From Styela clava (Eukaryota), in NCBI RefSeq assembly GCF_964204865.1, contig NC_135257.1:23126001-23190000 (forward strand): 64,000 bases of DNA, read 5' to 3'. Positions 266 to 56,299 of the stretch are shown piece after piece. Under the pieces are notes generated by a model. The model ran no database searches and had not been told where the DNA came from. It saw nothing but the letters and a program-made list of their open reading frames with translations. Each line of letters begins with the position of its first letter. Within the stretch, counting starts at the first letter, position 1. The position numbers were made by a program, and so were the translations under genes.

Positions 266-3200
266 ATTTGGCCGATGTACAAGACTTGAATAATAAGTTG
301 ATAAACGACAACGAAAAGATGGAAAAAGGTGAAATATGTTCACTAAAATTTTTTCTTGACAACATAATAGGATTTTCATGGAGCATTTCTTAAAGGTTGT
401 AAGTATCCGAGCAATATATTGAAAAGCGAAGAACCGCTTTATCAAAATGACACTGCTATTCGTAGCATTTGTTAACAATCTCTAAGATCTTGGGATTTTG
501 TGTTTGTCAGTAAAGAAGCATTATAAAGTATGAAATTAAAAATATTTCATGGCAGTTTTAATGAAGCGAGAGCATTATTCCAATAACTTTATTTGAAGAT
601 GTGATATTTCGTGAAACAACTGATACAAAACACAGAGAGCGAATAAGCTTATCCTGACTGTAATTTGAATTTACAAAAAACAATGACATTATTTTACCGA
701 ATGACTGTAAGAACTATTGTGAGCCTGTTTAAGATTAGTACACGTGTTCGATTATTTTCAGCTCTATACTCTAACTATGAAAAACGCTAGAAATGTGTGA
801 AATTGCGTGGCTGAAGTTTTATTGTATTAGCAAAAAGTAAATAGATCATGTGTAATATTAATATTAACATTTAGCGATATCCCGGATTGAGCAAAAACTT
901 GCTGTTACGGATAAGTCTCAAATGCTTCCAAGTAGATCCGAGCAGATAACTAGACCTACTCAAACAACATTGAAACCAACTCCTGCTTCAGGTGAATACT
1001 TTATTCAATCCAAGTTGTAGTTTATGAATATTTTATGAATAATCAACTTTAAAGTGGTCATAAATCAAAACGATATTTCTAAATTTGATGTAGCCGAAGC
1101 CGAGTAATGTCAGTAAGTGATAAATTTTATTGGATATTCACAACCAGAAAACAACAGACGCATTGCGTTATTGGCTTCATTGCATTTTCTCATGTCGGCA
1201 AGATTGATTTGGAATATTAAAGTTTTGTTTCAAGGTACCTGGTGCTTCTTCCACAATGCAACGATTGATTCAGCTCTTCCATTTCAGAAAACTGCAAATT
1301 AAAGGTCAGCAATATCTGCTATTTCGCTGTGATACGTGGTGAATATTATGCCTACGCCTACGACAAAGCAGTTGATATTTGTAAGAAACGTAACGCAGGT
1401 CTTGGTTTGATTCGAGATGAAGAATCCTACAGTGCGGTTATGAATTACTTGAGAAGTATTTCAAAGAGAAGGTCGTGGATTAATATCTGGACAGGAATTA
1501 AGATTGATCCAATGGTTAGTATCATATAGTTATGTCAATTATTCTCATCTGTAGGAATATAAAATATATTACGAGATGGGCAGAGTGTGAGGTGGTGAGA
1601 CACGGTCAAAAATGTTTGAGACATCTTGGGTTATTTTATCATCTACAACAGCGCAGGCGGTATATCGAATACATTTTTTAGGTTTTATCTGTTTCTGAAT
1701 CCGAGTAAATTTACTCAGAAGTTTTTGATTGTCTTGGCGTTAATGTTATCCGATATTTAAAAATTATACCAATATTAATTCCTCTTCAAGTTTACAACTT
1801 GGGCCTCAAACACAGCGCTGTAATGAAGCTTTGGAAATGGTAAATGAGCAAGCAAAAAAAAATATTGCTATATCTTAAATGATTTGCAATGCCACCAGTC
1901 TTACCACCAATATTTTATGAGTATCCCATTCATTTATGTCGGTGTCCCACCATAAATTAAATAATAGATACAAGTATATGAAGAAAATAGAGATGAAAAA
2001 CATTTGAAAGGTAAAAATCATAAAGACTAAGGTTAGCTCTGACGTAATCAAGTTGCTATGACACGGTTAAAGTTCTATGTGAAATACAAATGTGCTGCCC
2101 CATCCCATTCGCATGGACAAGCCTGTGTTTTACCACAAGTCTAAACTATTGAATCGCGCTGCTTGGCCCTGTTTCTCTATGAAGTTGACATGATCTTTAC
2201 ATTCGCTTTGTATAACTTGCTGCTTCGTCGTACATTGGAGATTATTTTTAGTTGATCCGCAACAACCTATTCATCTAATTCTATCAGAAGACACGTTTAG
2301 CACTCACTATCTCAGTGCGGGACAATTTGATTGCGGCCATTTTCGCATTCATGCTTCCAAACTTTCTTCGTGTTGCATCTGGTTTTGGCCTGCTTTTCGT
2401 CTATTTTAGCACCGATTTCTCCGCATATGGATGTATATGCGACACTTTCTGGATATTCAAATACAATTAAATTCAAGTTGGGAATTTAGAGCCTGATGTG
2501 GATCTCGTTCTTGAGAAAGTTTGGTTGTTCATGCGATTACGCAATATATATATGTGAAAGCAATTGTTTTTGCCGGTTTCATTACATTTTAACCCACGCA
2601 CATTTGAACCCGTAATTTGAAGCCACGACAATTGCACCTGACACCCATGAATTCTAATCTATAGGTTTTAGCACCCTCATATAGATTGAACCCGCGGATA
2701 TACGGGTGCAAATGTATGAGTTCAAATGAACGGTCACCCTTTTCGACTGATATCATAATAAAAACGCAATAACTTCCACGGGAAACATTTCACCTAAGTC
2801 TTCGGTTGAGAGCGAAGCACACTTTAGTTGGTACTATCGTAGGGTGCGTACCAGGTTGGGGTTAGGTAATAATTTTTCTGATTTACCTTATTTTTTCTGA
2901 TTTACCTTATTTTTTCTGATTTACCTTATTTGCGTTCTATCACGAGTTCGGGTACTGTTTGTGTTATCCAGATTCCCTGCCCATAGGTTTCAGTCCTTTC
3001 ACAAAACTTGATGTAAAGTAGGCGAACAGAATTAGTTACCTACATATTGGTAGACACATTTCTGGAGCTCCCTTTAGTTCCATTTAGATGCCACGCAATG
3101 ATATTGAGATCGCCACGCAAAATACTTACGGCGATATAATATGGCCAAATACTAGTGAATGGGGAAGCGATTCCGAAAAGCCATCTTGGTTAATGTTCTG

Positions 3201-4153
3201 TGGTCGTTATTGTTCGCTTTTAACTGATACGTTGGCCATATTGTTAATCCACGACATATGCAAATTGAAAAAAATAACCAAACTTGGAACCGTATGGTGG
3301 GCTGGGATATATTAGCGTTTGATACATCATGAAAAACGAATCAAGATCGGGAGAATATGCAAGAAAAATCGACGTAAATGGTCAAATCCCATAAGGAAAT
3401 GCATTACGCATCTCGGAAAAGTTGGAAGTCTATCGACTAAACAAGCGAGTCTTCATTTTGGTCCCGCGGAAATGAGAAAGAATCCCATTCTTTATTTATA
3501 TATCTCTGTGGTTGCACTGAACTGCTTCAAGTTTTATCTAACAGTAATTGTGCAATATTATAGTTTTGGAAAAGCCTTCGCCCAGAGCATGAACATGAAG
3601 TACTACATGGAAAGGCAAGAGAGATTAGAAATATTTGCATTTGCTTTTGACCAAGCATGGATCAATGATAATATGTATTGTTTCACCTAATCATCAGAAG
3701 ACTGGTCTTGCACTGAACTGCGTAGAGTCATAAAGGAATTGTGCAGTGCAATAGTTTTAGACAAATCTTTACCAAGCGTATGAACATGAAGTTTTAAATA
3801 TTATCATATGAGAGACTAGAAATACTTGCATTTACATTTGCCCAAGTATGGATCGATAATAATATATCGTATTTTGATGAAAAATTTCATGAAAAACGTC
3901 ATTTATGACTATAAATGCGTGATCATGCTTGATTTAGTGATAAACGCCATCTGATTTTCTTTAGACTGGTGACGTCACACCTGCATATTCATTCACTAAA
4001 TGGTCTCCAGGTTATCCAAAAACGGGAATTGAATATAAAGATCGCACAAATGTTTATCTCCATGTTGATGCATACCAGAATCGTCGTCAAGGGATGGTGA
4101 ATGGTCCTCCTACCTGGGAGCGTAATGGAGTTATTTGTGAGATCCTGATATAA
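266..4153 (+). CDS. Copy A: secreted coiled-coil/C-type lectin-like protein, 3' part (5' exons lie before the window)
   Basis: AG/GT-bounded exons in frame: 266-328 (DLADVQDLNNKLINDNEKMEK), 875-991 (AISRIEQKLAV...TTLKPTPAS), 1288-1514 (ENCKLKVSNICYF...AVDICKKRNA...IWTG...DPM), 3965-4153 (TGDVTPAYSFTKW...GVICEILI*). CTLD hallmarks: C-x7-CY, A-x3-C, WTG (WIG-like), terminal ICE. Confidence 0.85.
2575..2738. repeat. Short palindromic interspersed element (ACATTTGAACCC...GGGTTCAAATGT)
   Basis: Copies at 2575-2738, ~10616-10780 and ~54733-54900, plus an independent inverted copy at ~41012-41214 nested in the Charlie element. Confidence 0.65.
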
Positions 4154-6892: not shown

Positions 6893-9800
6893 ATGAAAAT
6901 CTCAATCGGGTTTTATCTTAATTTACGTCTTCGCTCCATCCTGGAGTCAAGATGAAACAGTGTTCCACTGCTTTCCCAAGCCGGGTTGCAAGATTGCACA
7001 ATGTGATCCAGTTGCTGTAGGATGGAACAGACCAGGTTTCAACATTGATCAACATCTACATGACAAAGAGTTTCCGATTACATGCAAATCCAAGCTTGCG
7101 CTACATTCTCGAAATACTGCTGACTTGTTTCCTTTAGTTTCCAGGAATATTTTAGGCAAGTATGATAGTTGTTGAAGAACCTCGTTCGATTAGATATAAA
7201 AACCTATGAAAACATTGGAAAGGATACCGTTTACAATTTTTATTTTAGGTTATATAATAAAAATATTTTTTTTATCCGGTAGATCTGAATCCATAAACAT
7301 ATAGGACAGCATAGAACATTGAGTGCAGAATCAAATCTTTGCATTTGGACATGGCATCAAAGTGTTATCATTTACCAACGATTATATTTGTAATCTGATA
7401 AAATGATATAAATTTATATTAATGAGTTTTCTATCTTCATCCAGATATTAGAAATATCAGATCAGATTTAAAGGAACTGGAAGAAAACTTCAAAAATAAA
7501 ATGGAAAAAATTGATGTTTCTGGAAATGACGGTTAGAATCATTGACAAATAGCTAGGAATATGTCCACAAATACTCAAATGTATGTAAAGTTTCTTTAAA
7601 AAGGTTTGTGGTCCTAAAGAAAATTGAACTGAAATTCAAGATGTTTAAAACAGAGTTTATTTTTCAACAGCAAGTGGCAACAAGTTTGAAGAACAATCAG
7701 CAAAAATTAACAAACTTGAAGGGAAGGTTGAAAAGCAATCTGGCGAAATGAAGAAATTGAAGAAAGGTTAGTTATATATTCGTCTACAGATGAGAGTGTA
7801 TTAGCTGAACCATTGAGAACAAATCAAAATTATGAAAATAGAATGATAAACTTTTATGAAACACGAGGGAAATAATTCAAATCGTGTCTATTAGAAATGT
7901 TCAATGAATACAGTTCACGCTTTCGTTGAACCTATTAAACGCAAAGTATCAGTGTCGACCCCTCTAACATTGACAATCGTGATTGTGAGACTCAATTGGC
8001 AGCTGAAATCGGAGAGTGCGGTACAAAACGCAACAAAAACTGCGCAACATTCTATTGAGATCAAAGATTTGAAAAAAGGTTGTTGCACATTTCTGACTGG
8101 TGAAGTTTTTTTTAGTCTCTTTTCTAGTATTTGAACCTGATGAAGCCAAAGGTTTTATTGCGTCAAAGTAATTAATTTAGCAAAGTCAGAATCTAATATG
8201 TTTCGAATATGTTGGGTCACAAATGCAGTTCTCTGAGAGTTGGGTTTTGCAGTCGTGGAAAATCATTCAATATCTCACTCGACTCAGAAGTGCTCTGAAC
8301 TCTCTCCGACTTTTTGAATATCCATGTATTTATAAAAAGCTACACTGACTGACTCAATATTATATTTCATTTCTTAGATTTGGTTGAAGTTCAACAGACG
8401 AATAAAATTTTGGTGGAAAAATTGTTTGAACAAAAGAAAACAAGCGACGAAATGAAGAAAGGTAAATTAAGTAAATTAATCGATGAGGATATGATCCATT
8501 AAAGCTAACAATCATGATAGGTAACTACTATCACAAAAACGTTTTTAAGCTGATGTTTCACGAACAATATACGGAACAAAGAATATTAAATATTGTATTC
8601 TGAACTTCTAAATGTTATTTCTTCATTAGATTTGGTTCAAGTTCAACAAACAAATATAAATTTGATAAAAGAATTGGATCGCATGAAGAAAACCATCGAT
8701 GAGATATCGAAAGGTATTTTTATGTTATTTTAGATCACCGGAATACAGGCAAGCGCAATAGTTGATAAGTTACAAAATAGAAAACCGCTTGCTCAGGTTA
8801 GCAGTTTTTAAATTAGAAACTTTTTTTATTCATATTTTCCCACGAACTAATTTATACCAAAGTATATTTTCAATTAATTGAGCGGAAAGTGCGCATGTTT
8901 CTGGCTTTTGAATGGAAAAATTGTAGGAAACCGGTCTAAATGACATTATTTCCACGACGGACTACCTTTTTGAGCCTGTCTAAGAACAATAAATTTGAAA
9001 AACAACAAAGACTGACACAACATTGGAACTGATTCTTTCTCCAGTTAAGTACTTTATCCAATATAAGTTGTAGTTTATGAATATTTGACGAATTATTCGC
9101 ATTATATCGTTTATCCAATATTGCATTTTTTTAAATTATTCAATCCAGGAAGAATATGAGCAATATATGCATTCCCAAATACGACCAGATGAGTCGACTA
9201 ATTTGATCAGATTGGAATATATTGAAATATTGTTAGAAGTTCCTTTGCTTCTTATTTGTAGCAACGATTTTTTGAAAAACATTACTTGTTTGATTTTGAA
9301 TTTTCAAATAAATTGTTGTTTCATTTCAGGAAACTGCGAACTAAAGGTTGGAAATAACTGCTATTTCGCTGTGATACGTGATGATATGGATGTCAACTAC
9401 GACAAAGCAGTTGATATTTGTAAGAAACGTAACGCAGATGTTGGTTTGATTCGAGATGAAGAATCTTACAATGCAATTGTGAATTACACGAGAAGGAATA
9501 TGCCAAAGGAAAAGAAGTGGGTTCAAATATGGACAAGAATTAAGATTAATCCAATGGTTAGTATCATATAGTTATGTCAATTAATCTCATCTGTAGGAAT
9601 ATAAAAGATATTACGAGATGGGCAGAGTGTGAGGTGATGAGACACGGTCAAAAATGTTTGAGAAATCTTGGGTTAGTTTATCATCTACAACAGCGCAGGC
9701 GGTATATCGAATACATTTTTTAGGTTTTATCTGTTTCTGAATCCGAGTAAATTTACTCAGAAGTTTTTGATTGTCTTGGCGTTAATGTTATCCGATATTT

Positions 9801-12106
9801 AAAAATTTTACCAATATTAATTCCACTTCAAGTTTACAACTTGGGCCTCAAACACAGCGCTGTAATGAAGCTTTGGAAATGGTAAATGAGCAAGCAAAAA
9901 AAAATATTGCTATATCTTAAATGATTTGCAATGCCACCAGTCTTACCACCAATATTTTATGAGTATCCCATTCATTTATATCGGTGTCCCACCATAAATT
10001 AAATTTTAGATACAAGTATATGAAGAAAAAGGAGAGGAAAAACATTTGAAAGGTAAAAATCATAAAGACTAAGGTTAGCTCTGACGTAATCAAGTTGCTA
10101 TGACACGGTTAAAGTTCTATGTGAAATACAAATGTGCTGCCCCATTCCATTCGCGTGGACACGCCTGTGTTTTACCACAAGTCTAAACTATTGAATCGCG
10201 CTGCTTGGCCCTGTTTCTCTATGAAGTTGACATGATCTTTACATTCGCTTTGTATAACTTGCGGCTTCATCGTACATTGGAAGTTATTTCCAGTTGTTCC
10301 GCAACAACCTATTCATCTAATTCTATCAGAAGACACGTGTAGCACTCACTATCTCAGTGCGGGACAATTTGATTGCGGCCATTTTCGCATTTATGCTTCC
10401 AAACTTTCTTCGTGTTGCATCTGGTTTTGGCCTGCTTTTCGTCTATTTTAGTACCGAGTTCTCCGCATATGGATGTATATGCGACACTTTCTGGATATTC
10501 AAATACAATTAAATTCAAGTTGGGAATTTAGAGCCTGATGTGGATCTCGTTCTTGAGAAAGTTTGGTTGTTCATGCGATTACGCAATATATATATGTGAA
10601 AGCAATTGTTTTTGCCGGTTTCATTACATTTTAACCCACGCACATTTGAACCCGTAATTTGAACCCACGACAATTGCACCTGACACCCATGAATTCTAAT
10701 CTATAGGTTTTAGCACCCTCATATAGATTGAACCCGCGGATATACGGGTGCAAATGTATGGGTTCAAATGAACGGTCACCCTTTTCGACTGATATCATAA
10801 TAAAAACGCAATAACTTCCACGGGAAACATTTCACCTAAGTCTTTGGTTGAAGGCGAAGCACACTTTGGTTGGTACTATCGTAGTGTGCGTACCAGGTTG
10901 GGGTTAGGCAATAATTTTTCTCATTTACCTTATTTTTCTGATTTATCTTATTTTTTCTGATTTACCTTATTTGCGTTCTATCACGAGTTCGGGTACTGTT
11001 TGTGTTATCCAGATTCCCTGCCCATATGTTTCAGTCCTTTCACAAAACTTGATGTAAAGTAGGCGAACAGAATTAGTTACCTATATATTGGTAGACACAT
11101 TTCTGGAGCTCCCTTTAGTTCCATTTAGATGCCACGCAATGATATTGAGATCGCCACGCAAAATACTTACGGCGATATAATATGGCCAAATACTAGTGAA
11201 TGGGGAAGCGATTCCGAAAAGCCATCTTGGTTAATGTTCTGTGGTTGTTATTGTTCGCTTTTAACTGATACGTTGGCCATATTGTTAATCCACGACATAT
11301 GCAAATTGAAAAAAAAATAACCAAACTTGGAACCGTATGGTGGGCTGGGATATATTAGCGTTTGATACATCATGAAAAACGAATCAAAATCGGGAGAATA
11401 TGCAAGAAAAATCGACGTAAATGATCAAATCCCATAAGAAATGCATTACGCATCTTGGAAAAGTTGGAAGTCTATCGACTAAACAAGCGAGTCTTCATTT
11501 TGGTCCCGCGGAAATGAGAAAGAATCCCATTCTTTATTTAAATATCTCTGTGGTTGCACTGAACTGCTTCAAGTTTAATCTAACAGTAATTGTGCAATAT
11601 TATAGTTTTGGAAAAGCCTTCGCCTAGAGCATGAACATGAAGTACTACATGGAAAGGCAAGAGAGATTAGAAATATTTGCATTTACTTTTGACTAAGCAT
11701 GGATCAAGAATATATATATCACAGTCGCTTCACATAATCATCAGAAGACTCGTCTTGCACTGAACTGCGTAGAGTCATAAAGGAATTGTGCAGTGCAATA
11801 GTTTTAGACAAATCTTTACCAAGCGTATGAACATGAAGTTTTAAATATTATCATATGAGAGACTAGAAATACTTGCATTTACATTCGACCAAGCATGGAT
11901 CAATAATAATATATCGTATTTTGATGAAAAATTTCATGAAAAACATCATTCATGACTATAAATGCGTGATCATGCTCGATTCAGTGATAAACGCCATCTG
12001 ATTTTTTTAGACTGGTGACGTCACACCTGCATATTCATTCACTAAATGGTATTCAGATTATCCAGTCACGGGAATTCATTATAAAGTAAGATTTGTGAGA
12101 TCCTGA
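6893..12106 (+). pseudogene. Copy B: pseudogene of the coiled-coil/CTLD family
   Basis: Exons 6893-7155 (+1 frameshift at 6908-6914, TGA at 6953-6955), 7445-7531, 7671-7766, 8378-8461, 8630-8713, relic linker ~9002-9046 with dead donor, CTLD 9330-9556, and last exon 12011-12106, where 92 nt of the A sequence are replaced by 4 nt (frameshift, loses the C-terminal CTLD strands and final Cys). Confidence 0.85.
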
Positions 12107-25839: not shown

Positions 25840-28800
25840 ATGAAAACCTCAATCATTTTTATCTTAATCTACGTCATTGCTTCATCCTGGTGCCAAGATG
25901 AAACAGTGTTTCACTGCTCTCCCAAGCCAGGTTGCCAGATTGCACAATGTGATCCGGTTGCTGTAGGATGGAACAAACCAGGTTTCATCATTGATGAACA
26001 TCTGCATGACAAAGAGTTTCCCATCACATGCAAATCTGAGAGTACGGCACAACCTCAGAATACTGCCAACTTATTTTCTTTGGTATCGAGGAATATTTTA
26101 GGCAAGTGGTTTTTTCACTGTTTAAAATACTTGGAGACAAAGCTATCTCACTATATAACAGGCGTTGTTCGTCATAGATTGAATTCATCACGCCTATTGA
26201 TGGGAAGTCTTGAGTGTCGGTAAGACTACTCTATCATACTGTTACGTTTCCCTTGCTCTCTAAATCCAATATGACGACAGGTATGGCAACTCAACATCAA
26301 AGTCAGATTCAAAAAAGTGCATCAAATTTACAACTTGTCTGATATTGATTTTGTATACCTTTTTCACAGGAGATTGTGCGTTCATTTCCTGTTTGCTGAC
26401 AATATAGCCAATTTATTTTTTTAGAGTAAAATCTTTAGTTAGGCAAAATTCATTAACTCATAGCTTGAACTGTTGCAGGCCACGCGTCGATTGTATCTCA
26501 CTAACGCTAAATTCAGAATATTTGGATATATTTTAGTGGTCTGTCGTTATATTGCTCAGAGAAGAGTTTTCTTACTTTTGAGAACTTATTTGTGCAAACA
26601 GAACTTTAAATTTTTCAATACTGATACTCAATTCCCTCAGGAGATCAGTTTCTCGCGACAATCATTTTAATGTTTCAATCAAATATCAAATGCTTGTATT
26701 ATTGAAACGCTTAAGATTGTTTCATAGTTCTCAACTTTTATTCAGATGTTAGAACTATCAAGTTAGGTCTGAAAAAATTAGAAGACAACGTCGATGAAAA
26801 CAGAAAAAACCTCGATCAATTTGAGAAAAACATGTTAGGTAAGAGTTGACGCACTCTGTTTTTGGAAGACACCTTATATTAAGTGAAAATCTGGTTTCAG
26901 CATTTAAATGTGATCGCCATTCGTGTCTTACAGAAACTGATTTAAAATTTTAAAGTTGATTTGAACAAAAGCTTTTTCATAGAAAAGGTATTTGAACCTA
27001 ATGTTTTCGCAGAACAAAAAGCTAACAATGAAATCAATAAACAATCTGACGAAGTTCGCAATCTTCGTGACAAAGCTCTTCAGCAATCTGGACAAATTAT
27101 TGATGTACTGGGAAAGTATGCAAAGCAATCTATTGAACTGAATGAACTTAAAATGAAAAACGTGGAACAATCTACCGAGATATCTGATTTGAAGAAAGGT
27201 TGGTGAATTGCATGATGTGATGAAGATTTATATTAAAATAAGTAAGGATTACTCAATTATTTGTTGACAACAGAATCTTTTTCGTACGGCATTTCTTACA
27301 AGTTCGTAATTATTAGAGAAAAATACGTGAAAATATCTAAAGGCGAAACCGCTTTAATAAAATGACAATTCTATTTGTAGCATTTTTCAACATTCTGTAA
27401 ATAGAAAAGTATTATAACGATTGTGACTGGGAAAATTTTATAAAATATTTCACGGAAAAGTTTGTAACCAGTTCATGCAGCGAAAGCATTCTCTCAATCA
27501 CTTTATTTGAAAAAGTGATATTTTGTGAAATTACTGATTTAAAAACACAGCGAAAAGGCTTGACGTGACTGTAATTTAAATAGGAGAAAAAATGACCTTA
27601 TTTTTTCGAAAGACTATAGGAACTTTTGTGAGCTTATTTGAGATTGGTGCATGTGGTCATTTATTTCCAACTCTATACTGAACAACTAAAAACGCCAGAA
27701 ATTTGTAAAGAAAGAAAAACATTGCTTAAGCTTTGTTGTTTTTGCAAGTGGCAAATAGCTGTTTTTAAACTTCATATTACCATTCAGCTATATCCCATAT
27801 TGAACAAAAACTTGCTGTTATGGAGAAGTCTCAGCTATTTCCAAATAGACCAGGGCAGATCACCAGACCAACAATAAAGTCTCGAACAACTCCTGCTCCA
27901 GGTAAATATTTAATTCAATCTAAGTTGTAGCTTATGATTCACGAATCATTCCCATTAAAGTTGATTTTAACATAAACGATATTTTCACATGCGATGGAGA
28001 CGAAGGTAATGTCAGCAAGTTATGAATGTTATTAGGATAATTGAAACCAGGAAACAACATATGCATTGTGTTATTGGCCTCATTGCATTTATTTAAGCCA
28101 GCTAGTTTGATTTGAAAATATTGAAGTTAAAGGTACCGGGTGTTTCTACCGCAACGAAATGATTAATTAATAATTATAAGTCAATATATATTTAAATAAA
28201 TAGTTGTATACTAATTCAGCAAACTGCAAATTAAAAGTCGGAAATATCTGTTATTTCGCTGCAATGTTCGATGAAATGAATGTCAACTACAATAAAGCCG
28301 TTGATATTTGTAAGAAACGTAACGCAGATGTTGGCTTGATTAGAGATGAAGAGTCTTACAATGCAATTGTGAATTACTTGAGAAGAAATATTCCAAAGGG
28401 ATGGGTGGGGATAACTATATGGACAGGAATCCACTTTGATCCAATGGTTGGTATTATATGGTTAAGCCAATTATCTTCTTGTGTAATACATCATGAGATA
28501 AGGGGAGTGTGGTGTGAGACATTACCGAATATATTTGAGACAACTTGAGTTAATTCATTAGCTATTTAAGATACTTTTTTACGTTTCACCTGTTCCTGAC
28601 TCCGGGTTAATTTACTCAGAGTTTTTTTGGGAAATTAGTATTAGCCGAGGTGACTAATCTTTTTTAATGAACAGTTTTTGTAGCTTAGATCTGGGGTGTG
28701 CAAACTGCGGCCCGCAAAGAAAAATTGTGCCGCCCGCGGAGAATTGCCAATCCCGCGAAGAATTGCCAATACACAATGTTATAAAACGTGATTCTAACTG

Positions 28801-36408: not shown

Positions 36409-39400
36409 ATGAAAATCTCAATAGTTTTCATATTAATCTAGGTCATCGCTTTATGCTGGTGTCAAGATGAACCGAGTTTCACTGTTCACCCAAGCCTGGT
36501 TGTCAGATTGCACATCGTGATTCGGGCAGACTAACTTTTGACATTGATAAACATACCAAAGAATATCCGATCTCATGCAAGTCCAATAGTACTGTCCTTA
36601 GCTGTCTTGATTTGGCATCCAGAAATTTGGGTAAAATTTTTTCTTTATCTTCTTGTGTAAGTGTAATTAAGTTGTGTAATTAACAAACTATTGTTTTAAT
36701 TAGGCTGAGTTTTGCGTTATTATCTACCAAGAAATAAGGTTTTTCGATATTTTGCATGATGCAATCGAATCTAAAAAAAAAAACTTTTATTCAGATATCA
36801 CAAATATCAGAATAGGATTGAAAAAATTGGAAAACAGGTTTGATGAAAAAATGGAGAGTTTCGGTAAAGAAATTTTTGCTCAGTGCCGATAGTTTCTTAT
36901 TACAGTAAAATGCAAATTTTCCCACACTTTGTGATTTCTGTTCTGTTTATTTTAAACTTTTATTTCAACCCTAAGTACTCGAACATACAGCCAACTGTTT
37001 AACCAAAAATAATCCTTCAAAACAAATGAGTGAAAGCTCCAAAAAATGTAAGAAAGTGAACTAAAGACCTTAAGCGATATTAATTCATAAGAATCTCCTT
37101 GTTTTTAGGTCTAGGCTGTTGATGGGCGCCAGATGCTTCCAGTCACTTCTTGGCTCCTGCTTTTTTATTGACCTTAGCTGCTGCCTTGGTTTTTTTCACA
37201 TTCCCGGTCTTTTTGGTAGTTTCCTTGATGTCGTTAAATTTGAAATAAACGATCTATTGAGGGAAACTACGAAACAGTCTGATAAGATCAGAGAATTGAA
37301 GGAAGTTTGGTGGAAGGAAGGAAAGATTATTGCAACAGTGTGATGCTTGTTATACTGTTATTGCTAAACTGAGTGAAATGATTTGCAATTCCGTAAAGTC
37401 AAGTGCTAACCATCGCTATCAACATTAAATCATACTCGAGTTTTCAACGCTCTAAGTTATTCTTAATCTTTTTCATATTTTCAGTGCCCGAAGGTTTTTG
37501 GCAATAATACAGTACAATAATTTTACCAAAACGAGGGAAATCAGAGTCTTCTATTTATATGTCCCAATCTTATTTCAATACTGCAACGAATGTGTGTCTT
37601 GATCTACTGGATAATCATATTTTTAGACTTGGTTGAAATTCAAGAAATGAATGAAAAGTTGGTAGAAGAAAACAATAAGATGAAGAGAGGTGAAAACCAT
37701 CAAAAGGGCCTGAATACTGTTGTTCTAGCTTATAGAGATGTTTTACATATTTTCTGGACTCTGGTAACTGCTATGACAAACATGGCTATTTTAACTGCTG
37801 CTTCGAAATCCTATATAGGTTACAATGGTAAACAATATAATATTTCATACTGAGCAGCTGAATGTTATTTTAAATGTTATTCTTTCATTAGATTTGATTA
37901 AAGTACAAGAAATGAATGAGGAGTTGAGAGATGACAACGAAAAGATGGAGAAAGGTAAAATATGTCGAATAATTTTCGTTATTGACATTGTAGTTTGCTG
38001 GGAAATATTTTAGTGCAGTGTGAGTACATTTACTGGGATATATTTTAGGAAAAATGGGACATCTCCGAAATCGTATACGTATCCCATAAACATGATGAGA
38101 ATTATATTTGTAACATTTTCCAACAATCTGTACGACCTGGGGATTTTGTGTTTGTCAGAAGTAAATTATTGTGACGTATGAAACAGGGGGCATTTTTACA
38201 AATTAGAATTTCTTACGAAATATTACATTGCAAAGTTGGTGACAGTTTATGCAGTGAAAACATTCTCCCAAACTATTCAAGTAAAGAAATGATATTTTTT
38301 TAAATTATTGCAACGAAACACATCACACGAAAATGCTTGCCGTGGCTGTAATATAAATGAAAAAAACCAGTAAACATTTCAATAGAACATCATTTTTCCG
38401 AAGGAATATCAGAACTATCTTATGAATATCAGAGTATGTTTAAAATCAGAAAATATTCCACTAATTTTTCATTTCTACCAATGAACAATTAAAAACGCTA
38501 GAGACTTGTAACGATTGAAACTCGCATAAAGGCGTTGTTGTTTTGGAAAGTGGTAGATAGCTGGAGGAGGTGTCTAATATTAATTATATGATAATTTAGC
38601 GATATCCAGGATTGAACAAACACTTGCTGTTATGGAGAAGCCTCAGAAGCTTCTAAATAGATCCGGGCAGATTAACAGACCAACAACAAAGACTCGAGGA
38701 ACATTGAAACCAACTCCTCCTCCAGGTGAATAATTCATCCAATCCAAGTTGTAATTTGTGAACAGTTGATGTATCATTCGCATTAAAGCAATTATAAAAC
38801 AAAACGATATCCCTACATTCGATGGAGCCGAAGCCGAGTAATGTCAGCAAGTTATAAATGTTATTGGATTTTCTTCTGCATAATAACAACCAAAAAAAAA
38901 ACCTACTCATTGTTTTATTTGCTTCATTACATTTTCTCAAGCCGGTTAGTTTGATTTGGGATATTGAAGTACTCTTTGAAGGTGCACCTTTTTCAAAACA
39001 AGGTATGATCAATATTTATTACTCGATAAATTTTCACGTGTACAGATATTTTATTTCAGAAAACTGAAAATTGAAGATTGGAAATATCTGTTATTTCGCT
39101 GTGATATATCATAAGCAGAATGTCAACTATGACAAAGCAGTTGATATCTGTAAGAAACGTAACGCAGATGTTGGTTTGATTCGAGATGAAGAATCTTACA
39201 ATGCGGTTATGAATTACTTGAGAAAGAATATTCCAACGAAACAGACGTGGGTTCATATATATATATAAGGATCAACTTTGATCCAATGGATAGTATCATA
39301 AAGGTATGCCAATTATTCTCATATGTAGGAATATAAAATACCTCACGAGATGGGCAAAGTGTTAGTCAAAGATGTTTAAGACAAATTGGGTTAGTTCATT

Positions 39401-40163
39401 ATCTACAACTGTTCAGGCGGTATATCGAATACTTTTTTTTATCTGTTTCTGACTCTGAATAAATTTACTCAGAAGTTTTTTTGCAAAGTTTTTGATTGTC
39501 TCGGCGTTAATGTCCATCGATATTTGAAATTGGTACCCATATTAATTCCACCTCAAGTTCACAACTTGGGCGCAAACCCAGCGTTGTAATAAAGCGTGGT
39601 ACATGAGCAACAACAAAACGCAAAATAACGAGGTGATTGATTACGTCATGGATAACCTTAGTCTTTATGCTTTTTACCTTTCAAATGTTTTCCTTCTCCC
39701 TTTTTTGCAATAATTGTATCCATTATTTAATTCATGGTGAAAGAGCGACACAAATAAATGTGATTCCCACGAAAAACGTCCCATGTGATGTGATGGAACA
39801 AGCATTAATTGGTACTAGATGTCCCATGGCAAGCCTGTGGGCAATGCATATCACTAATATATGACACATCGTTATTATGCGATTTGTAATGCGATTTTAA
39901 GTAATTTATGAAATTAAATGGGCGATCAAGCATGATCCTGTGATATACGTCAATTATTTTCTTTTAAGACTGGTGACGTCACACCTGCAGATTCATTCTT
40001 TAAATGGAGTCGGGATGGTATTCCATTCACCGGTATTGATTCTAAAGATCGTACAAATGTTTATCTCAATGTTAATTCTGAAACGAATTATAATGATCAA
40101 GGGATGGCGAATGCTGCTCCTACCTGGGAGCGTAACGGAGTTATTTGTGAGATCCTGATCTAA
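36409..40163 (+). pseudogene. Copy D: degraded pseudogene of the coiled-coil/CTLD family
   Basis: Exons 36409-36630 (TAG at 36439-36441 plus a -1 frameshift), 36795-36863, 37627-37689, 37892-37954, 38600-38725, 39060-39288 (Cys codon to TGA at 39065-39067, (TA)n disruption, donor GT to GA), and last exon 39969-40163, which is still open. Confidence 0.88.
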
Positions 40164-50600: not shown

Positions 50601-50646
50601 AACTTTTCTTTATTCAGTCACTACTTAACTACACTGAAACCACGAG

Positions 50647-53600
50647 ATGAAAATCTCAATCGTTTTTATTTTAATTTACGTCATCGATTCATCCTGGTGC
50701 CAAGATGAAACAGTGTTTCACTGCTCTCCCAAGCCGGGTTGCCAGATTGCACAATGTGATCCGGTTGCTGTAGGATGGGACAGACCAGGGTTTAACTTTG
50801 ATGAACATCTGCATGATAAAGAATTCCCGATTACGTGCAAATCTAAGAATACTCCACAACCTCAGAATACTGCCGACTGGCTTCCCTTGGTATCAAGGAA
50901 CATTTTAGGTGAGTGGTTTATTTACTGTTTAAAATACTTGAAGGCAAAGCTATCTCATTATATCACAGGCGTTGTTTGTCATCGATTGAATACTTCACGC
51001 CTATTTATGAAAAGTCTTGGGTGTGGTTTGCGTCTAAAACTACTCTATTATACTGTTACGTTTTCCCTGCGCTCTAAATCCACTATGACAACAGGTATTG
51101 CAACTCAATATCAAAGTCAGATTCAAAAACGAGCATCAAATTTACAACTTGTGTGATATTGATAACCGATACTTTTATCAATGGCGATTGTGCGTTCATT
51201 TGCTGTTTTCTGACATTATAGCCAATTAAGTTTTATTATTTAAATTTTATTATTTTATTACAATTTTACACTGAGTCAAAGCTTCAGTTAGGCAAAACTC
51301 ACTAACTCTAACTAGCTTTTACTGTTGCAAGCCTGGCGTCAATTCGCACTCACTAACGCTTAAATATATATAGTTTCATAAACTTTGAATATATTTTAGT
51401 ATCTGCTGTTAACTGCGCAGATAAGAGTCTCCTTACTTTTGATTCAGTACTCAATTCGAATACGGGATTATTTTGGTAACAATCATTTCTGTTTATAATA
51501 TTTCAACCAAATCTTTGTATCATTAAAACACTCGGAATAGTTTTCATAGTTCTTACTTTTTATTCAGATATTGGAACTATCAAGTCGGAATTGAAACAAT
51601 TGGAAGACAACGTCGTTGAAAACAGCAGAAACCTCGATCATTTTGAGCATAGCATGTCAGGTGAAAAGTGACTACACGTTTTACCAGTCCGTTTATTGTG
51701 AGACATGATCTTATAAGTGAAATTCTGATTGTCTTACAGAAATTGCTCTGAATTTTAAAATTTGAATAAAAGTTTTTCATAGAAAAAGAATTTGAACCTA
51801 ATTTTTTCGCAGATCAAAAAGCTAACAATGAAATTAAGAGACAATCTGATGAAGTTCGCAATCTTCGTGACAAGGCTCTTCAGCAATCTGGACAAATTAA
51901 TGATGTACTGAGAAAGTATGCAAAGCAATCTATTGAACTGAATGAACTTAAAATAGAAAATGTGAAACAATCTACCGAAATATCTGATCTGAAGAAAGGT
52001 TGGTGAATTCATGATGTGACGAGGGTCTCAGTAATAATTACTCAATGAATTGAATAAGTAGCTCACACTTGAGAATGAATTGGATCACAAAACAATTTCA
52101 GGTTTTACATTTCAGAGACGTTACCGCCGCATGTCTCTTGCGTTGGTAGTTAGGATACTTAGTGAATTTGAACTTACCCTAATAAAATCATTTCGAATTT
52201 GAAATAGTCGAACTGAGGTTTGGAAGCTGCAGTTTTCGCAATTTAAATAATCCAGATTCCTTCTCTATGGATGCCCCTATATGTTTATGCAAGCATAGCA
52301 CTTTCATGGCTTCTATTCATTTTTTCGCATTCGAGAACTACTATGACAAACGTTTTTATAACTGCTGTTTTCAGAGACAATATATGAAATAAAATAAAAT
52401 GCATTACTTTCTCACTAGATTTGGCCGATGTACAAGACTTGAATAATAAGTTGATAAACGACAACGAAAAGATGGAAAAAGGTGAAATATGTTCACTAAA
52501 ATTTTTTCTTGACAACATAATAGGATTTTCATGGAGCATTTCTTAAAGGTTGTAAGTATCCGAGCAATATATTGAAAAACGAAGAACCGCTTTATCAAAA
52601 TGACACTGCTATTCGTAGCATTTGTTAACAATCTCTAAGATCTTGGGATTTTGTGTTTGTCAGTAAAGAAGCATTATAAAGTATGAAATTAAAAATATTT
52701 CATGGCAGTTTTAATGAAGCGAGAGCATTATTCCAATAACTTTATTTGAAGATGTGATATTTCGTGAAACAACTGATACAAAACACAGAGAGCGAATAAG
52801 CTTATCCTGACTGTAATTTGAATTTACAAAAAACAATGACATTATTTTACCGAATGACTGTAAGAACTATTGTGAGCCTGTTTAAGATTAGTACACGTGT
52901 TCGATTATTTTCAGCTCTATACTCTAACTATGAAAAACGCTAGAAATGTGTGAAATTGCGTGGCTGAAGTTTTATTGTATTAGCAAAAAGTAAATAGATC
53001 ATGTGTAATATTAATATTAACATTTAGCGATATCCCGGATTGAGCAAAAACTTGCTGTTACGGATAAGTCTCAAATGCTTCCAAGTAGATCCGAGCAGAT
53101 AACTAGACCTACTCAAACAACATTGAAACCAACTCCTGCTTCAGGTGAATACTTTATTCAATCCAAGTTGTAGTTTATGAATATTTTATGAATAATCAAC
53201 TTTAAAGTGGTCATAAATCAAAACGATATTTCTAAATTTAATGTAGCCGAAGCCGAGTAATGTCAGTAAGTGATAAATTTTATTGGATATTCACAACCAG
53301 AAAACAACAGACGCATTGCGTTATTGGCTTCATTGCATTTTCTCATGTCGGCAAGATTGATTTGGAATATTAAAGTTTTGTTTCAAGGTACCTGGTGCTT
53401 CTTCCACAATGCAACGATTGATTCAGCTCTTCCATTTCAGAAAACTGCAAATTAAAGGTCGGCAATTTCTGCTATTTCGCTGTGATACGTGGTGAACGGG
53501 TAAGGGATGTCAACTACGACAAAGCAGTTGATATTTGTAAGAAACGTAACGCAGATGTTTGCTTGATTCGAGATGAAGAATCCTACAGTGCGGTTATGAA

Positions 53601-56299
53601 TTACTTGAGAAGTAATATTCCAAAGGGAAGGTTGTGGGCTTCAATATGGACAGGAATTAAGATTGATCCAATGGTTAGTATCATATAGTTATGCCAATTA
53701 TTCTCATCTGTAGGAATATAAAATATATTACGAGATGGGCAGAGTGTGAGGTGGTGAGACACGGTCAAAAATGTTTGAGACATCTTGGGTTATTTTATTA
53801 TCTACGACAGCGCAGGCGGTATATCGAATACATTTTTTAGGTTTTATCTGTTTCTGAATCCGAGTAAATTTACTCAGAAGTTTTTGATTGTCTTGGCGTT
53901 AATGTTATCCGATATTTAAAAATTATACCAATATTTATTCCACTTCAAGTTTACAACTTGGGCCTCAAACACAGCGCTGTAATGAAGCTTTGGAAATGGT
54001 AAATGAGCAAGCAAAAAAAAATATTGCTATATCTTAAATGATTTGCAATGCCACCAGTCTTACCACCAATACTTTATGAGTATCCCATTCATTTATGTCG
54101 GTGTCCCACCATAAATTAAATTTTAGATACAAGTATATGAAGAAAAAGGAGAGAAAAAACATTTGAAAGGTAAAAATCATAAAGACTAAGGTTAGCTCTG
54201 ACGTAATCAAGTTGCTATGACACGGTTAAAGTTCTATGTAAAATACAAATGTGCTGCCCCATCCCATTCGCATGGACACGCCTGTGTTTTACCACAAGTC
54301 TAAACTATTGAATCGCGCTGCTTGGCCCTGTTTCTCTATGAAGTTGACATGATCTTTACATTCGCTTTGTATAACTTGCGGCTTCATCGTACATTGGAAG
54401 TTATTTCCAGTTGTTCCGCAACAACCTATTCATCTAATTCTATCAGAAGACACGTGTAGCACTCACTATCTCAGTGCGGGACAATTTGATTGCGGCCATT
54501 TACGCATTTATGCTTCCAAACTTTCTTCGTGTTGCATCTGGTTTTGGCCTGCTTTTCGTCTATTTTAGTACCGAGTTCTCCGCATATGGATGTATATGCG
54601 ACACTTTCTGGATATTCAAATACAATTAAATTCAAGTTGGGAATTTAGAGCCTGATGTGGATCTCGTTCTTGAGAAAGTTTGGTTGTTCATGCGATTACG
54701 CAATATATATATGTGAAAACAATTGTTTTTTCCGGTTTCATTACATTTTAACCCACGCACATTTGAACCCGTAATATGAACCCACGACAATTGCACCTGA
54801 CACCCATGAATTCTAGTCTATAGGTTTTAGCACCCTCATATAGATTGAACCCGCGGATATACGGGTGCAAATGTATGTGGGTTCAAATGTACGGTCACCC
54901 TTTTCGACTGATATCATAATAAAAACGCAATAACTTCCACGGGAAACATTTCACCTAAGTCTTCGGTTGAGAGCGAAGCACACTTTGGTTGGTACTATCG
55001 TAGGGTGCGTACCAGGTTGGGGTTAGGCAATAATTTTTCTGATTTACCTTATTTTTCTGATTTACCTTATTTGCGTTCTATCACGAGTTCGGGTACTGTT
55101 TGTGTTATCCAGATTCCCTGCCCATAGGTTTCAGTCCTTTCACAAAACTTGATGTAAAGTAGGCGAACAGAATTAGTTACCTACATATTGGTAGACACAT
55201 TTCTGGAGCTCCCTTTAGTTCCATTTAGATGCCACGCAATGATATTGAGATCGCCACGCAAAATACTTACGGCGATATAATATGGCCAAATACTAGTGAA
55301 TGGGGAAGCGATTCCGAAAAGCCATCTTGGTTAATGTTGTGTGGTCGTTATTGTTCGCTTTTAACTGATACGTTGGCCATATTGTTAATCCACGACATTT
55401 GCAAATTGAAAAAAATAACCAAACTTGGAACCGTATGGTGGGCTGGGATATATTAGCGTTTGATACATCATGAAAAACGAATCAAGATCGGGAGAATATG
55501 CAAGAAAAATCGACGTAAATGGTCAAATCCCATAAGGAAATGCATTACGCATCTCAGAAAAGTTGGAAGTCTATCGACTAAACAAGCGAGTCTTCATTTT
55601 GGTCCCGCGGAAATGAGAAAGAATCCCATTCTTTATTTATATATCTCTGTGGTTGCACTGAACTGCTTCAAGTTTAATCTAACAGTAATTGTGCAATATT
55701 ATAGTTTTGGAAAAGCCTTCGCCCAGAGCATGAACATGAAGTACTACATGGAAAGGCAAGAGAGATTAGAAATATTTGCATTTACTTTTGACTAAGCATA
55801 GATCAAGAATATATATATCACAGTCGCTTCACATAATCATCAGAAGACTCGTCTTGCACTGAACTGCGTAGAGTCATAAAGGAATTGTGCAGTGCAATAG
55901 TTTTAGACAAATCTTTACCAAGTGTATGAACATGAAGTTTTAAATATTATCATATGAGAGACTAGAAATACTTGCATTTACATTCGACCAAGCATGGATC
56001 AATAATAATATATCGTATTTTGATGAAAAATTTCATGAAAAACATCATTCATGACTATAAATGCGTGATCATGCTCGATTCAGTGATAAACGCCATCTGA
56101 TTTTCTTTAGACTGGTGACGTCACACCTGCATATTCATTCACTAAATGGTATCCAGATTATCCACGCACGGGAATTGAATATAAAGATCGCACAAATGTT
56201 TATCTTCATGTTGATTTATACCAGTATCGTCGTCAAGGGATGGGGAATGGTGATCCTACCTTTGGGCTCCGTGGAGTTATTTGTGAGATCCTGATATAA
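50647..56299 (+). CDS. Copy E: intact secreted coiled-coil/C-type lectin-like protein (~380 aa)
   Basis: Exons 50647-50908, 51568-51660, 51813-51998, 52419-52481, 53028-53144, 53441-53673, 56111-56299 (TAA). All introns are GT-AG and the spliced sum of 1143 nt is open. AATAAA at 56339-56344. Confidence 0.9.

What the first reader, a model, noticed from the sequence alone, without database searches (positions are those of the whole stretch)
1288..56299. Hypervariable C-type lectin-like domains inside otherwise near-identical duplicated genes: a candidate diversifying recognition-receptor system
Seen: A and E have identical 63-nt neck and 117-nt linker exons, and I find only three substitutions across 1-1287 vs 52154-53440. 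Their two CTLD exons, however, differ by 26 amino-acid substitutions and 2 codon indels against only 2 silent codon changes (ATC/ATA, CTC/CTT). Many codons carry 2-3 nt changes. Variation clusters in the same segments across all copies. HV1 after CYFAV: A RGEYYAYA, E RGERVRDVN, B RDDMDVN, C (CYFAAM)FDEMNVN, D YHKQNVN. HV2 before WTG: A SISKRRSWIN, E SNIPKGRLWAS, B RNMPKEKKWVQ, C RNIPKGWVGIT. Long loop: A WSPGYPK, E WYPDYPR, C WGPGQPF, D WSRDGIPF. Pre-terminal: A VNGPPTWERN, E GNGDPTFGLR, C ENAALTWKQH. Inference: coding exons more divergent than neighbouring introns imply strong diversifying selection and/or segmental conversion on a ligand-binding face, as in immune, allorecognition or gamete-recognition receptor families.
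Basis: partly seen in the sequence, partly recalled or inferred. Interest (0 to 1): 0.9.

Follow-up and report, generated by a model that had tools for sequence, protein, structure and literature searches.

The report
Sea-squirt lectin genes with hypervariable loops
The window holds part of a very large, species-restricted cluster of sea-squirt (Styela clava) genes for secreted lectin-like proteins whose surface loops differ sharply even between freshly duplicated copies; this is a real and uncharacterised family, but of a kind of fast-evolving recognition gene family already known from other animals.

Summary
Genes A and E differ at 0.2% upstream, 2.6% in the intron, and 10-12% in the two lectin-domain (CTLD) exons. 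That makes 27 amino-acid-changing codons, 2 codon indels and only 2 silent changes. The differing columns are also the most variable ones in 19 other paralogs.

The organism is Styela clava. The genes encode secreted proteins: signal peptide, Cys-rich N-domain, long coiled coil, Thr/Pro stalk and a C-terminal CTLD. They belong to a family of about 85 or more copies in about 2.4 Mb at a chromosome end, found only in this species. B and D are broken copies.

The exon-versus-intron contrast has two causes.
- The 2.45-kb CTLD intron is shared at 97-99% among A, B, E and F (its first 400 bases also with a fifth gene, L004), yet their exons differ by 11-19% at silent sites. The intron was homogenised or transferred by gene conversion. 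In those pairs the contrast says nothing about selection.
- In the sister pair A/E, silent sites match the intron (about 3%). The excess is amino-acid-changing and confined to loop patches, many codons carry several base changes, and no donor exists in this genome.

Family-wide omega in those columns is 1.5 against 0.53 elsewhere (p about 0.012). Diversifying selection is likely but not proven. Function is untested, and "receptor" is a misnomer. An earlier scan note (s1-807456) flagged the same family 1.1 Mb upstream.

The parts
265..330 (+). Gene A (LOC144411731, protein P0053): neck exon, the end of the coiled coil. It is identical in gene E.
   Evidence: tblastn of P0053 and P0043
874..990 (+). 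Gene A: Thr/Pro-rich linker exon, identical in gene E.
1288..1514 (+). Gene A: CTLD exon 1 (strands beta0 and beta1, helices alpha1 and alpha2, strand beta2). It holds patch HV1 at 1338-1361 and patch HV2 at 1455-1484. The acceptor ends in cag and the donor starts gttagt.
   Evidence: Both patches occur only once in the genome at up to 3 mismatches.
1515..3964 (+). Gene A: the 2450-base CTLD intron. It is 97-99% identical to the introns of B, E and F, and its first 400 bases also to gene L004. It is a patchwork of conversion tracts.
3965..4153 (+). Gene A: CTLD exon 2 with its stop codon (long loop, strands beta3 to beta5). It holds patches HV3, HV4 and HV5.
9330..9556 (+). Gene B (LOC120346730, protein P0004): CTLD exon 1, intact.
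12011..12091 (+). Gene B: remnant of CTLD exon 2. About 92 bases are deleted relative to A, which shifts the frame. The public gene model instead uses a short terminal exon at 10010-10069 inside the intron.
28220..28446 (+). Gene C: CTLD exon 1. At least four near-identical copies lie elsewhere in the cluster.
29533..29721 (+). Gene C: CTLD exon 2. The protein ends ...ICENQ.
39060..39286 (+). Copy D: CTLD exon 1, broken by a TGA in codon 2, a frameshift near its end and a lost splice donor.
39969..40163 (+). Copy D: CTLD exon 2, with an open frame.
50647..52483 (+). Gene E (LOC144425808, protein P0043): the 5' exons. Signal peptide and Cys-rich domain lie at about 50647-50907. Coiled-coil exons lie at 51567-51668, 51806-51997 and 52418-52483.
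   Evidence: tblastn of P0043
53027..53143 (+). Gene E: linker exon.
53441..53673 (+). Gene E: CTLD exon 1. Patch HV1 is at about 53488-53514 and patch HV2 at about 53611-53649. A GT after base 53491 is the donor used in the annotated E-F chimeric isoform X2.
   Evidence: A contig of an independent DNA run (X2) covers 53170-53534 with 1 difference.
53674..56110 (+). Gene E: the 2437-base CTLD intron. It contains a high-copy repeat at about 54766-55300.
   Evidence: A contig of the probable RNA run X5 holds the joint 53672>56110 with GT..AG ends.
56111..56299 (+). Gene E: CTLD exon 2 with its stop codon. Patch HV3 is at 56150-56167, HV4 at 56207-56233 and HV5 at 56243-56272.

Best explanation
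**What it is.** The window is part of a subtelomeric array of genes that keep being duplicated and lost. It spans about 2.4 Mb, holds at least about 85 CTLD exon copies, and is built from higher-order repeat units of about 52-62 kb. The genes are specific to Styela clava. Each encodes a secreted protein in this order: signal peptide, Cys-rich N-domain, coiled coil of about 125 residues, Thr/Pro stalk, C-terminal C-type-lectin-like domain. The domain lacks the inner disulfide and the Ca2+/sugar motifs. The layout resembles tetranectin or a collectin without the collagen part.

**Where it varies.** The CTLD has a conserved framework and five variable loop patches:
- HV1: the beta1-alpha1 loop.
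- HV2: the alpha2-beta2 loop.
- HV3: the long loop.
- HV4: the beta3-beta4 turn.
- HV5: the beta4-beta5 loop.

**Why exons exceed introns: two layered processes.**
1. Shown. Gene conversion, or transfer anchored in the conserved exon ends, has homogenised the 2.45-kb CTLD intron among A, B, E and F (its first 400 bases also with L004). The flanking exons keep silent-site divergence of 11-19%.
2. The pattern is shown; its cause is inferred. The sister genes A and E share an identical framework. They differ by private changes confined to the loop patches: amino-acid-changing, often several bases per codon, and including indels. I infer diversifying selection on ligand-contacting loops. Part of it may act on abrupt segment replacements rather than on single point changes.

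**Likely function (inferred).** Multivalent soluble recognition of variable non-sugar or atypical ligands, such as microbial surfaces or conspecific cells and gametes.
For: **Organism and family**
- The proteins are public Styela clava records, all named 'uncharacterized protein'.
- Only 27 hits turned up among 1.84 billion representative proteins, and the six whose clusters I looked up are S. clava records. A second search gave 32 hits, all S. clava.
- The genome holds 147 matches to CTLD exon 1. About 85 of them lie on contig C9 between 21.0 and 23.45 Mb of a 23.8-Mb contig.

**Protein**
- The architecture is read from the sequences and their alignment.
- The structure model gives the CTLD pLDDT 70-89, with all patches in loops.
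- Foldseek matches CD93, CL-K1, tetranectin and SP-A CTLDs at probability 1.0 and TM-score 0.6-0.7 normalised to the target.

**A versus E**
- Regional divergence is 0.23%, 11.9%, 2.55%, 10.1% and 0.88% (upstream, exon 1, intron, exon 2, downstream).
- Silent-site divergence is 0.029 against 0.0255 in the intron.
- Amino-acid-changing differences against silent ones: p 0.012. Against silent plus intron: p 1.4e-15.
- The patches of both A and E occur only once in the genome at up to 3 mismatches over 24-30 bases. The nearest exon 1 anywhere in the genome is 87% identical.

**Intron homogenisation**
- Exon silent-site divergence is 0.11-0.19 against 0.016-0.027 in the intron for five gene pairs (p 1e-3 to 1e-7).
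- Variable sites in the intron fall in blocks, a patchwork of tracts.

**Family level**
- Omega is 1.51 in the columns that differ between A and E, estimated on 19 other paralogs, against 0.53 in the rest. The test against omega 1 gives 2 delta lnL 6.26.
- Silent divergence is similar in the patches and the framework (0.36 against 0.32), so the patches are not mutation hotspots.
- The independent recent pair F/L004 has 4 replacement and 0 silent changes, at codon 9, HV1 and HV2.

**Reality of gene E**
- A contig of the probable RNA run X5 carries the spliced exon 1-exon 2 joint of E.
- An independent DNA run carries E's HV1.
Against: - Within the exons alone the signal is modest. The standard Nei-Gojobori estimate, which averages over pathways, gives omega 1.67 for A/E, which is not significant.
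- Pooled codon counts on recent branches give p 0.08.
- Family omega of 1.1-1.5 is close to neutrality, and recombination among paralogs can inflate such tests.
- Both silent A/E differences lie next to variable patches. The intron also carries A-private clusters of 4-8% divergence. Patchy divergence is therefore a property of the whole locus and could come from conversion by donors absent from this haploid assembly.
- Several recent duplicates show purifying selection, not diversification.
- No coordinates were available to show that the patches form one face.
- There are no population data, no tissue information and no ligand.
Confidence: 0.6

Rival explanations
1. Neutral mosaic. The loops are simply unconstrained. 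Frequent gene conversion homogenises long stretches of high identity (introns, flanks, framework). Densely mismatched loop patches block or escape conversion because the paired strands are rejected. No positive selection is needed.
For: - Family omega in the patches is only 1.1-1.5.
- Conversion is clearly rampant.
- The intron also has divergent patches where no selection is expected.
Against: - A and E have identical framework stretches of only 39-48 bases between the patches, including their silent sites. Separate conversion tracts that fill exactly those gaps are unlikely.
- Neutral loops and a neutral intron should be homogenised alike.
- Omega above 1 is significant at p about 0.012.
- F/L004 shows 4 replacement and 0 silent changes at the same sites.
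Confidence: 0.2
2. Micro-conversion from unsampled donors. The A and E patches were copied in short tracts from paralogs or alleles that exist in other haplotypes of this copy-number-variable cluster but not in the reference assembly. Selection may or may not be involved.
For: - Changes are clustered and hit several bases per codon, and silent changes lie next to the patches.
- L042 is a proven mosaic: its exon resembles L044 and its flank resembles L009.
- Some patch states are shared with other paralogs, for example A's PTWERN with L018 and D.
Against: - No donor exists within 3 mismatches for five patches of A and E in the 377-Mb assembly.
- No exon 1 anywhere in the genome is closer than 87%.
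Confidence: 0.13
3. Programmed or targeted mutation of the CTLD exons. A dedicated hypermutation or templated diversification mechanism acts on the loop patches.
For: - Dense changes of several bases per codon in short patches.
- A's HV1 contains a direct GCCTAC duplication.
- The CTLD fold is the scaffold used by bacterial diversity-generating retroelements (PMC5006420).
Against: - Silent divergence is no higher in the patches than in the framework.
- Recent duplicates of the C type and the pair L017/L018 are unchanged in protein.
- The differences are fixed in the germline genome.
- The only mobile-element gene seen in the window is a broken hAT transposase.
Confidence: 0.03
4. Assembly artefact. 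A and E are one gene, or their CTLD exons were mis-polished.
For: The flanks are near-identical and the region is highly repetitive.
Against: - The differences keep the reading frame and are almost all amino-acid-changing.
- A contig from another DNA sample matches E's HV1 with 1 difference over 365 bases.
- Run X1 shows A's state at 53461 beside E's.
- A probable RNA contig carries E's splice joint (all).
- Both genes have separate public gene models.
Confidence: 0.02

Closest known systems
Tetranectin and collectins (soluble CTLD proteins with a coiled-coil neck; animal C-type lectin groups IX and III)
   Same: Secreted, with an alpha-helical coiled coil directly before a C-terminal long-form CTLD. 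The best structural matches include the CL-K1 trimer, tetranectin and the SP-A neck with its lectin domain.
   Different: - No collagen region.
- A Thr/Pro mucin-like stalk sits between the coil and the CTLD.
- A new Cys-rich N-domain.
- The inner C2-C3 disulfide and the EPN/WND Ca2+ and sugar motifs are absent (read).
- Pfam Lectin_C scores fall below its threshold.
- Trimer formation is untested.
Snake-venom 'accelerated evolution' and ASSET, the accelerated segment switch in exons (PMC2711939). The venom C-type lectin-like proteins and PLA2 genes with introns more conserved than exons are cited from my own knowledge.
   Same: Exons are more divergent than introns in recently duplicated secreted-protein genes. 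Short surface segments are radically replaced while the framework stays the same.
   Different: - This is a tunicate, not a venom gland.
- Here part of the contrast is demonstrably intron homogenisation among paralogs.
- No target is known.
MHC class I and II genes, where introns are homogenised by recombination while binding-site exons stay old and diverse (my own knowledge: Cereb et al. 1997; Bergstrom et al. 1998)
   Same: The intron is much younger than the flanking exons at silent sites. Conversion and selection act together on a multigene recognition family.
   Different: - A different fold.
- Here the comparison is between paralogs, not alleles.
- Balancing selection has not been shown.
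Expanded, fast-evolving lectin-like families of invertebrates and NK-cell CTLD receptors such as Ly49/KLR (my own knowledge), and other S. clava lectin clusters flagged by this scan
   Same: Tandem arrays with gene birth and death, pseudogenes, and variation concentrated in loops.
   Different: - A soluble coiled-coil format.
- Restricted to one species.
- About 85 or more copies at one chromosome end.
Variable proteins of diversity-generating retroelements (CLec fold; PMC5006420, PMC6328139)
   Same: The C-type lectin fold tolerates massive variation near its C-terminal loops. HV4 and HV5 lie in the equivalent region.
   Different: No retroelement, no template repeat and no adenine-specific pattern. 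The variation here is germline variation between paralogs.

Membership tests
C-type lectin-like domain (CTLD) superfamily | The CTLD fold, with secondary structure in the order beta0-beta1-alpha1-alpha2-beta2-long loop-beta3-beta4-beta5 | tested here: met
   The AF2 model has exactly these elements. Foldseek gives probability 1.0 and E 5e-6 to solved CTLDs, with TM-score 0.6-0.7 normalised to the target.
C-type lectin-like domain (CTLD) superfamily | Sequence match to Pfam Lectin_C (PF00059) above the gathering score | tested here: not met
   A and E score 15-17 bits against a cutoff of 22.6, and only the N-terminal half matches. P0001, a more distant relative with several such domains, passes at 37 bits.
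C-type lectin-like domain (CTLD) superfamily | Conserved outer disulfide C1-C4, the N-terminal hairpin cysteines, and the WIGL-type core motif | tested here: met
   Invariant C243, C251, C273 and C376 and the motif IWTG are in alignment A1.
Ca2+-dependent carbohydrate-binding C-type lectins | An EPN or QPD motif, a WND motif and the inner C2-C3 disulfide | tested here: not met
   The long loop reads W-x-P-G-x-P-x-T-G. The beta3 strand reads NVYLxV with no Cys. The beta4 strand reads QGMxN.
Collectins | A collagen-like Gly-X-Y region N-terminal to the neck | tested here: not met
   None of the 24 aligned proteins has Gly-X-Y repeats.
Tetranectin-like (group IX) proteins | A trimerising coiled coil directly joined to the CTLD | tested here: inconclusive
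   A long helix is predicted at 124-216, but a 25-residue Thr/Pro linker intervenes. The trimer prediction could not be run: the tool was unreachable.
Gene family under diversifying selection | dN/dS above 1 at a defined set of sites, tested on data independent of how the sites were chosen | tested here: met
   Omega is 1.51 in the columns that differ between A and E, estimated on 19 other paralogs, and the test against omega 1 gives 2 delta lnL 6.26. Caveat: the tree was fixed and recombination was ignored.
Gene family under diversifying selection | Variable sites form one exposed binding surface | not testable with these tools
Allorecognition or gamete-recognition system | High allelic polymorphism with balancing selection; expression in hemocytes or gametes; linkage to a compatibility phenotype | not tested
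   The single read-laying run gave no usable population data. Run labels are coded, so tissues are unknown.

The most novel reading that the evidence does not exclude
The cluster encodes a germline repertoire of soluble, multivalent CTLD proteins with variable loops. Styela clava would use it for individual-specific recognition (self/non-self of gametes or hemocytes) or as a diversified set of opsonins. The repertoire would be enlarged further by splicing between neighbouring genes: the annotated isoform joins a donor inside HV1 of gene E to an acceptor inside HV1 of gene F. This would be a new chordate recognition system built on the lectin fold.
Probability: 0.1. Interest if true: 0.85.

Novelty: new member of a known kind. 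Interest (0 to 1): 0.55.

Why it matters
Tunicates are the closest living relatives of vertebrates and lack antibodies. Large germline families of variable recognition proteins are how such animals may widen their recognition range.

This family is large, restricted to one species, secreted and unnamed. It also gives an unusually clean natural example of two forces acting on one 4-kb cassette. Gene conversion erases differences in the intron, while the loops of the flanking exons stay different or become different.

It offers concrete material for testing what the loops bind, and whether segment replacement rather than point mutation drives the change.

Tried and rejected
- **Whole-exon or patch donors.** Genome-wide DNA searches with the exon 1 sequences of A and E, and pattern searches with five patches at up to 3 mismatches, found only the genes themselves. 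A's private intron clusters also have no closer copy than B, E and F at 96%.
- **Ancestral-state counting per site.** The machine does not offer ancestral sequences, so I did not attempt this by any other route. I used a partitioned codon model and pairwise counts instead.
- **Fetching all copies.** Analyses therefore use 42 exon 1 copies and 24 full CTLDs.
- **Read laying.** Hi-C raw reads gave almost no depth on the exons, and the contig runs are short fragments. There is no population information and no clear copy-number check.
- **An apparent new HV1 variant in an RNA contig.** It proved to be another paralog of the reference genome, at C9:22055812.
- **Trimer prediction for residues 150-380 of E.** The tool was unreachable four times, so there is no result.
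- **Profile search of solved structures by sequence.** It matched only coiled coils.
- **Literature.** No paper in the library names these genes or describes this family.
- **Joined exons.** Spliced coding sequences were joined only inside scripts, for codon counts. Searches in the tools used single exons by reference or public protein ids.

Full report
**What is in the window**

A self-comparison shows that the window is a mosaic of segmental duplications. Positions 1-4718 match 52154-56864 at 97%. Positions 1277-4040 match 9319-12086 at 95.5%.

Splice sites and reading frames hold for A, C and E.
- B has lost about 92 bases of exon 2, which shifts the frame.
- D has a TGA in codon 2, a frameshift near the end of exon 1 and no GT donor.
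- B and D are therefore broken copies, and their "hypervariable" residues partly reflect decay.

**Checking the observation**

An A/E alignment gives the following counts.

| Region | Mismatches / aligned bases |
|---|---|
| Upstream, including the identical neck and linker exons | 3 / 1287 |
| CTLD exon 1 | 27 / 227, plus 6 gap columns |
| Intron | 62 / 2430 |
| CTLD exon 2 | 19 / 189 |
| Downstream | 5 / 565 |

- The exons are more divergent than the intron (odds ratio 4.7, p 5.5e-13) and far more divergent than the flanks (p 4e-27).
- At codon level there are 27 replacement codons, 2 codon indels and 2 silent codons. Fourteen replacement codons carry 2-3 base changes.

The claim that variation clusters in the same segments also holds.
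- In 42 exon 1 copies the framework is almost invariant: NCKLKVGNICYFAVI ... NYDKAVDICKKRNADVGLIRDEESYNAIMNYLRKNIPK ... IWTGIKFDPM. The two patches between these blocks vary in sequence and in length.
- The columns that differ between A and E have twice the entropy of other columns in 19 other paralogs (1.89 against 0.92 bits, p 6.6e-7).

**Organism and family**

- A search of 1.84 billion representative proteins with exon 1 found 27 hits. The six whose clusters I looked up are public Styela clava records.
- A second search found 32 proteins, all from S. clava, all named "uncharacterized protein" or carrying a misleading automatic name (one is "golgin subfamily A member 3-like").
- Gene E is LOC144425808 (P0043, 380 aa). 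Gene A is LOC144411731 (P0053, 378 aa). Gene B is LOC120346730.
- The genome holds 147 matches to exon 1. About 85 lie on one contig between 21.0 and 23.45 Mb of 23.8 Mb, at a chromosome end. At least eight of them have in-frame stops.
- Equal-scoring copies recur every 52-62 kb. A and B, then E and F, open successive higher-order repeat units. F lies just past the window end.
- An earlier first-stage note of this scan (s1-807456) flagged the same kind of family 1.1 Mb upstream. It was not followed up.

**The protein**

Full-length members share one layout:
- a signal peptide;
- a conserved Cys-rich N-domain;
- a coiled coil with a variable number of repeats;
- a Thr/Pro-rich stalk with a variable number of repeats;
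- the CTLD.

There is no membrane segment, so these are secreted proteins, not receptors in the strict sense.

An AlphaFold2 model of E built on the 24-sequence alignment is confident for the CTLD (pLDDT 70-89). It has the canonical order beta0-beta1-alpha1-alpha2-beta2-long loop-beta3-beta4-beta5. Foldseek matches solved CTLDs at probability 1.0, among them CD93, the CL-K1 trimer, dectin-2, tetranectin and SP-A.

By sequence the Pfam model is missed: 15-17 bits against a cutoff of 22.6. The alignment shows no inner disulfide and no EPN/WND motifs. Ca2+-dependent sugar binding is therefore unlikely.

All five variable patches lie in loops of the model:
- HV1: the beta1-alpha1 loop.
- HV2: the alpha2-beta2 loop.
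- HV3: the long loop.
- HV4: the beta3-beta4 turn.
- HV5: the beta4-beta5 loop.

HV3 and HV4 correspond to the classical ligand-binding loops of CTLDs (established knowledge).

**Why exons exceed introns: two different reasons**

A four-way alignment of A, E, B and F shows a striking pattern.
- The CTLD intron is 97-99% identical in all four genes. Its first 400 bases are equally close in a fifth gene, L004, 400 kb away on the other strand.
- Upstream of exon 1, A/E and B/F cannot be aligned at all.
- The exons differ by 10-20%.

Counting only silent changes in codons that encode the same amino acid gives the following.

| Pair | Silent divergence in exons | Intron divergence | p |
|---|---|---|---|
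| E-F | 0.160 | 0.018 | 1.4e-7 |
| A-F | 0.141 | 0.021 | 1.5e-5 |
| B-F | 0.112 | 0.022 | 0.0016 |
| E-B | 0.145 | 0.016 | 2.3e-5 |
| A-B | 0.185 | 0.027 | 2.9e-5 |
| A-E | 0.029 | 0.0255 | not significant |

For the first five pairs the exons are genuinely older than the intron between them. The intron has been homogenised, or moved as a block, by gene conversion whose ends lie in the conserved exon edges. Variable sites in the intron fall in blocks (A private; A=F against E=B; A=B against E=F), which is a patchwork of tracts. In these pairs the contrast is no evidence for selection.

The sister pair A/E is different. Silent divergence equals intron divergence, and the framework between patches is identical, silent sites included. 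The excess is made of replacement changes confined to the patches.
- 44 base differences in changed codons over about 324 sites, against 2 silent over 69 (p 0.012).
- Against silent plus intron, p is 1.4e-15.
- At the neutral level of 0.029 about 9 replacement changes are expected. About 40 are seen.

**Where the patch differences come from**

- The nearest exon 1 to A anywhere in the genome is E at 87%, and the reverse holds too.
- Five patch sequences were each found only once in 377 Mb at up to 3 mismatches: A HV1, A HV2, E HV1, E HV2 and E HV5.
- Copying from a paralog present in this assembly is thus not supported. Donors in other haplotypes cannot be excluded.
- Some changes look like single complex events. 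A's HV1 contains a direct GCCTAC duplication.
- Both silent A/E differences sit next to patches.
- This resembles the "accelerated segment switch in exons" described for snake toxins (PMC2711939).

**Selection in the family as a whole**

I defined the test columns from A/E alone and estimated omega on 19 other paralogs with a Goldman-Yang codon model.
- Omega is 1.51 in those 29 columns, 0.53 in the other 109 and 0.69 overall.
- Fixing omega at 1 costs 3.13 log-likelihood units, p about 0.012.
- Pairwise counts agree. In the patch columns replacement divergence is 0.40 and silent 0.36. In the framework they are 0.17 and 0.32.
- Silent divergence is about the same in both partitions, so the patches are not mutation hotspots.
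- The independent recent pair F/L004 has four replacement and no silent changes, at codon 9, HV1 and HV2.

Against a universal process:
- The five C-type copies (flanks 1.5-2.8% apart) have 0-1 replacement changes in exon 1.
- L017 and L018 have six silent and no replacement changes.
- L009/L042 is a plain recombinant mosaic.

Caveats:
- The tree was fixed and recombination was ignored.
- The standard Nei-Gojobori omega for A/E is only 1.67, because pathway averaging assigns part of the multi-hit changes to silent steps.

**Reality of the sequences**

One read-laying run gave limited but useful support.
- A contig of a probable RNA run joins 53672 to 56110 with GT..AG ends, with depth concentrated on the exons. 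Gene E is spliced as modelled.
- A contig from another DNA sample covers 53170-53534 with one difference, so E's HV1 is not an assembly slip.
- Run X1 shows A's base beside E's at 53461.
- Coverage was too thin for any statement on polymorphism.

**Verdict**

- There is a real, large, uncharacterised family of secreted CTLD proteins with variable loops.
- The A/E pair shows a strong patch-limited replacement excess, best explained by diversifying selection, possibly acting on segment replacements.
- Much of the exon-versus-intron contrast in the window comes from intron homogenisation by gene conversion.
- Family-wide selection is modest.
- Two of the five copies are broken.
- The proposed biological roles are untested.
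- The kind of system (a tandem, fast-evolving lectin-like recognition family) is well known. This member and its soluble coiled-coil format are new.

Noticed in passing
window 53491 (donor) to L032:1559 (acceptor, about 11 kb downstream, just past the window end): The public isoform X2 of gene E (P0041) is reproduced exactly by three steps. Splice from a GT inside HV1 of E's CTLD exon 1 to an AG inside HV1 of the next gene F, continue through the rest of F's exon 1, then add F's exon 2. The result is a chimeric CTLD spliced between two genes. I could not check whether RNA supports it.
   Followed up: partly
window 16900-18438 (-): A 512-aa open frame with a hAT-family transposase dimerisation domain and DUF4371. 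It is a transposon remnant in the GC-richer stretch between copies B and C.
   Followed up: partly
window 54766-55300 (and the matching part of the A, B and F introns): A very high-copy repeat inside the shared CTLD intron. Read depth is 100 to 1000 times that of its neighbours, with many inverted joints. It is probably a small mobile element with hairpin ends.
   Followed up: no
Proteins P0053 and P0043, residues 45-57 and 77-79 (the N-terminal exons; those of A lie upstream of the window): A and E also differ at 12 of the first 166 residues, in two small clusters of the Cys-rich N-domain. The alternative states (NLF or DWL, and so on) are shared with other paralogs, which suggests shuffling by conversion in the N-terminal exons too.
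   Followed up: partly
window 46555-46859: A tandem array of 9.2 copies of a 33-base unit at 98% identity, followed by a 238-base repeat, in the spacer before gene E.
   Followed up: no
window 10010-10069: The public model of broken gene B ends in a 20-codon exon that lies inside the shared CTLD intron. The same sequence is present at 95% identity in E's intron (54127-54186).
   Followed up: no
protein P0001 (another chromosome): A more distant S. clava relative carries several tandem copies of this atypical CTLD in one 710-aa protein, and one of them passes the Pfam Lectin_C threshold. It may be an older form of the family.
   Followed up: no
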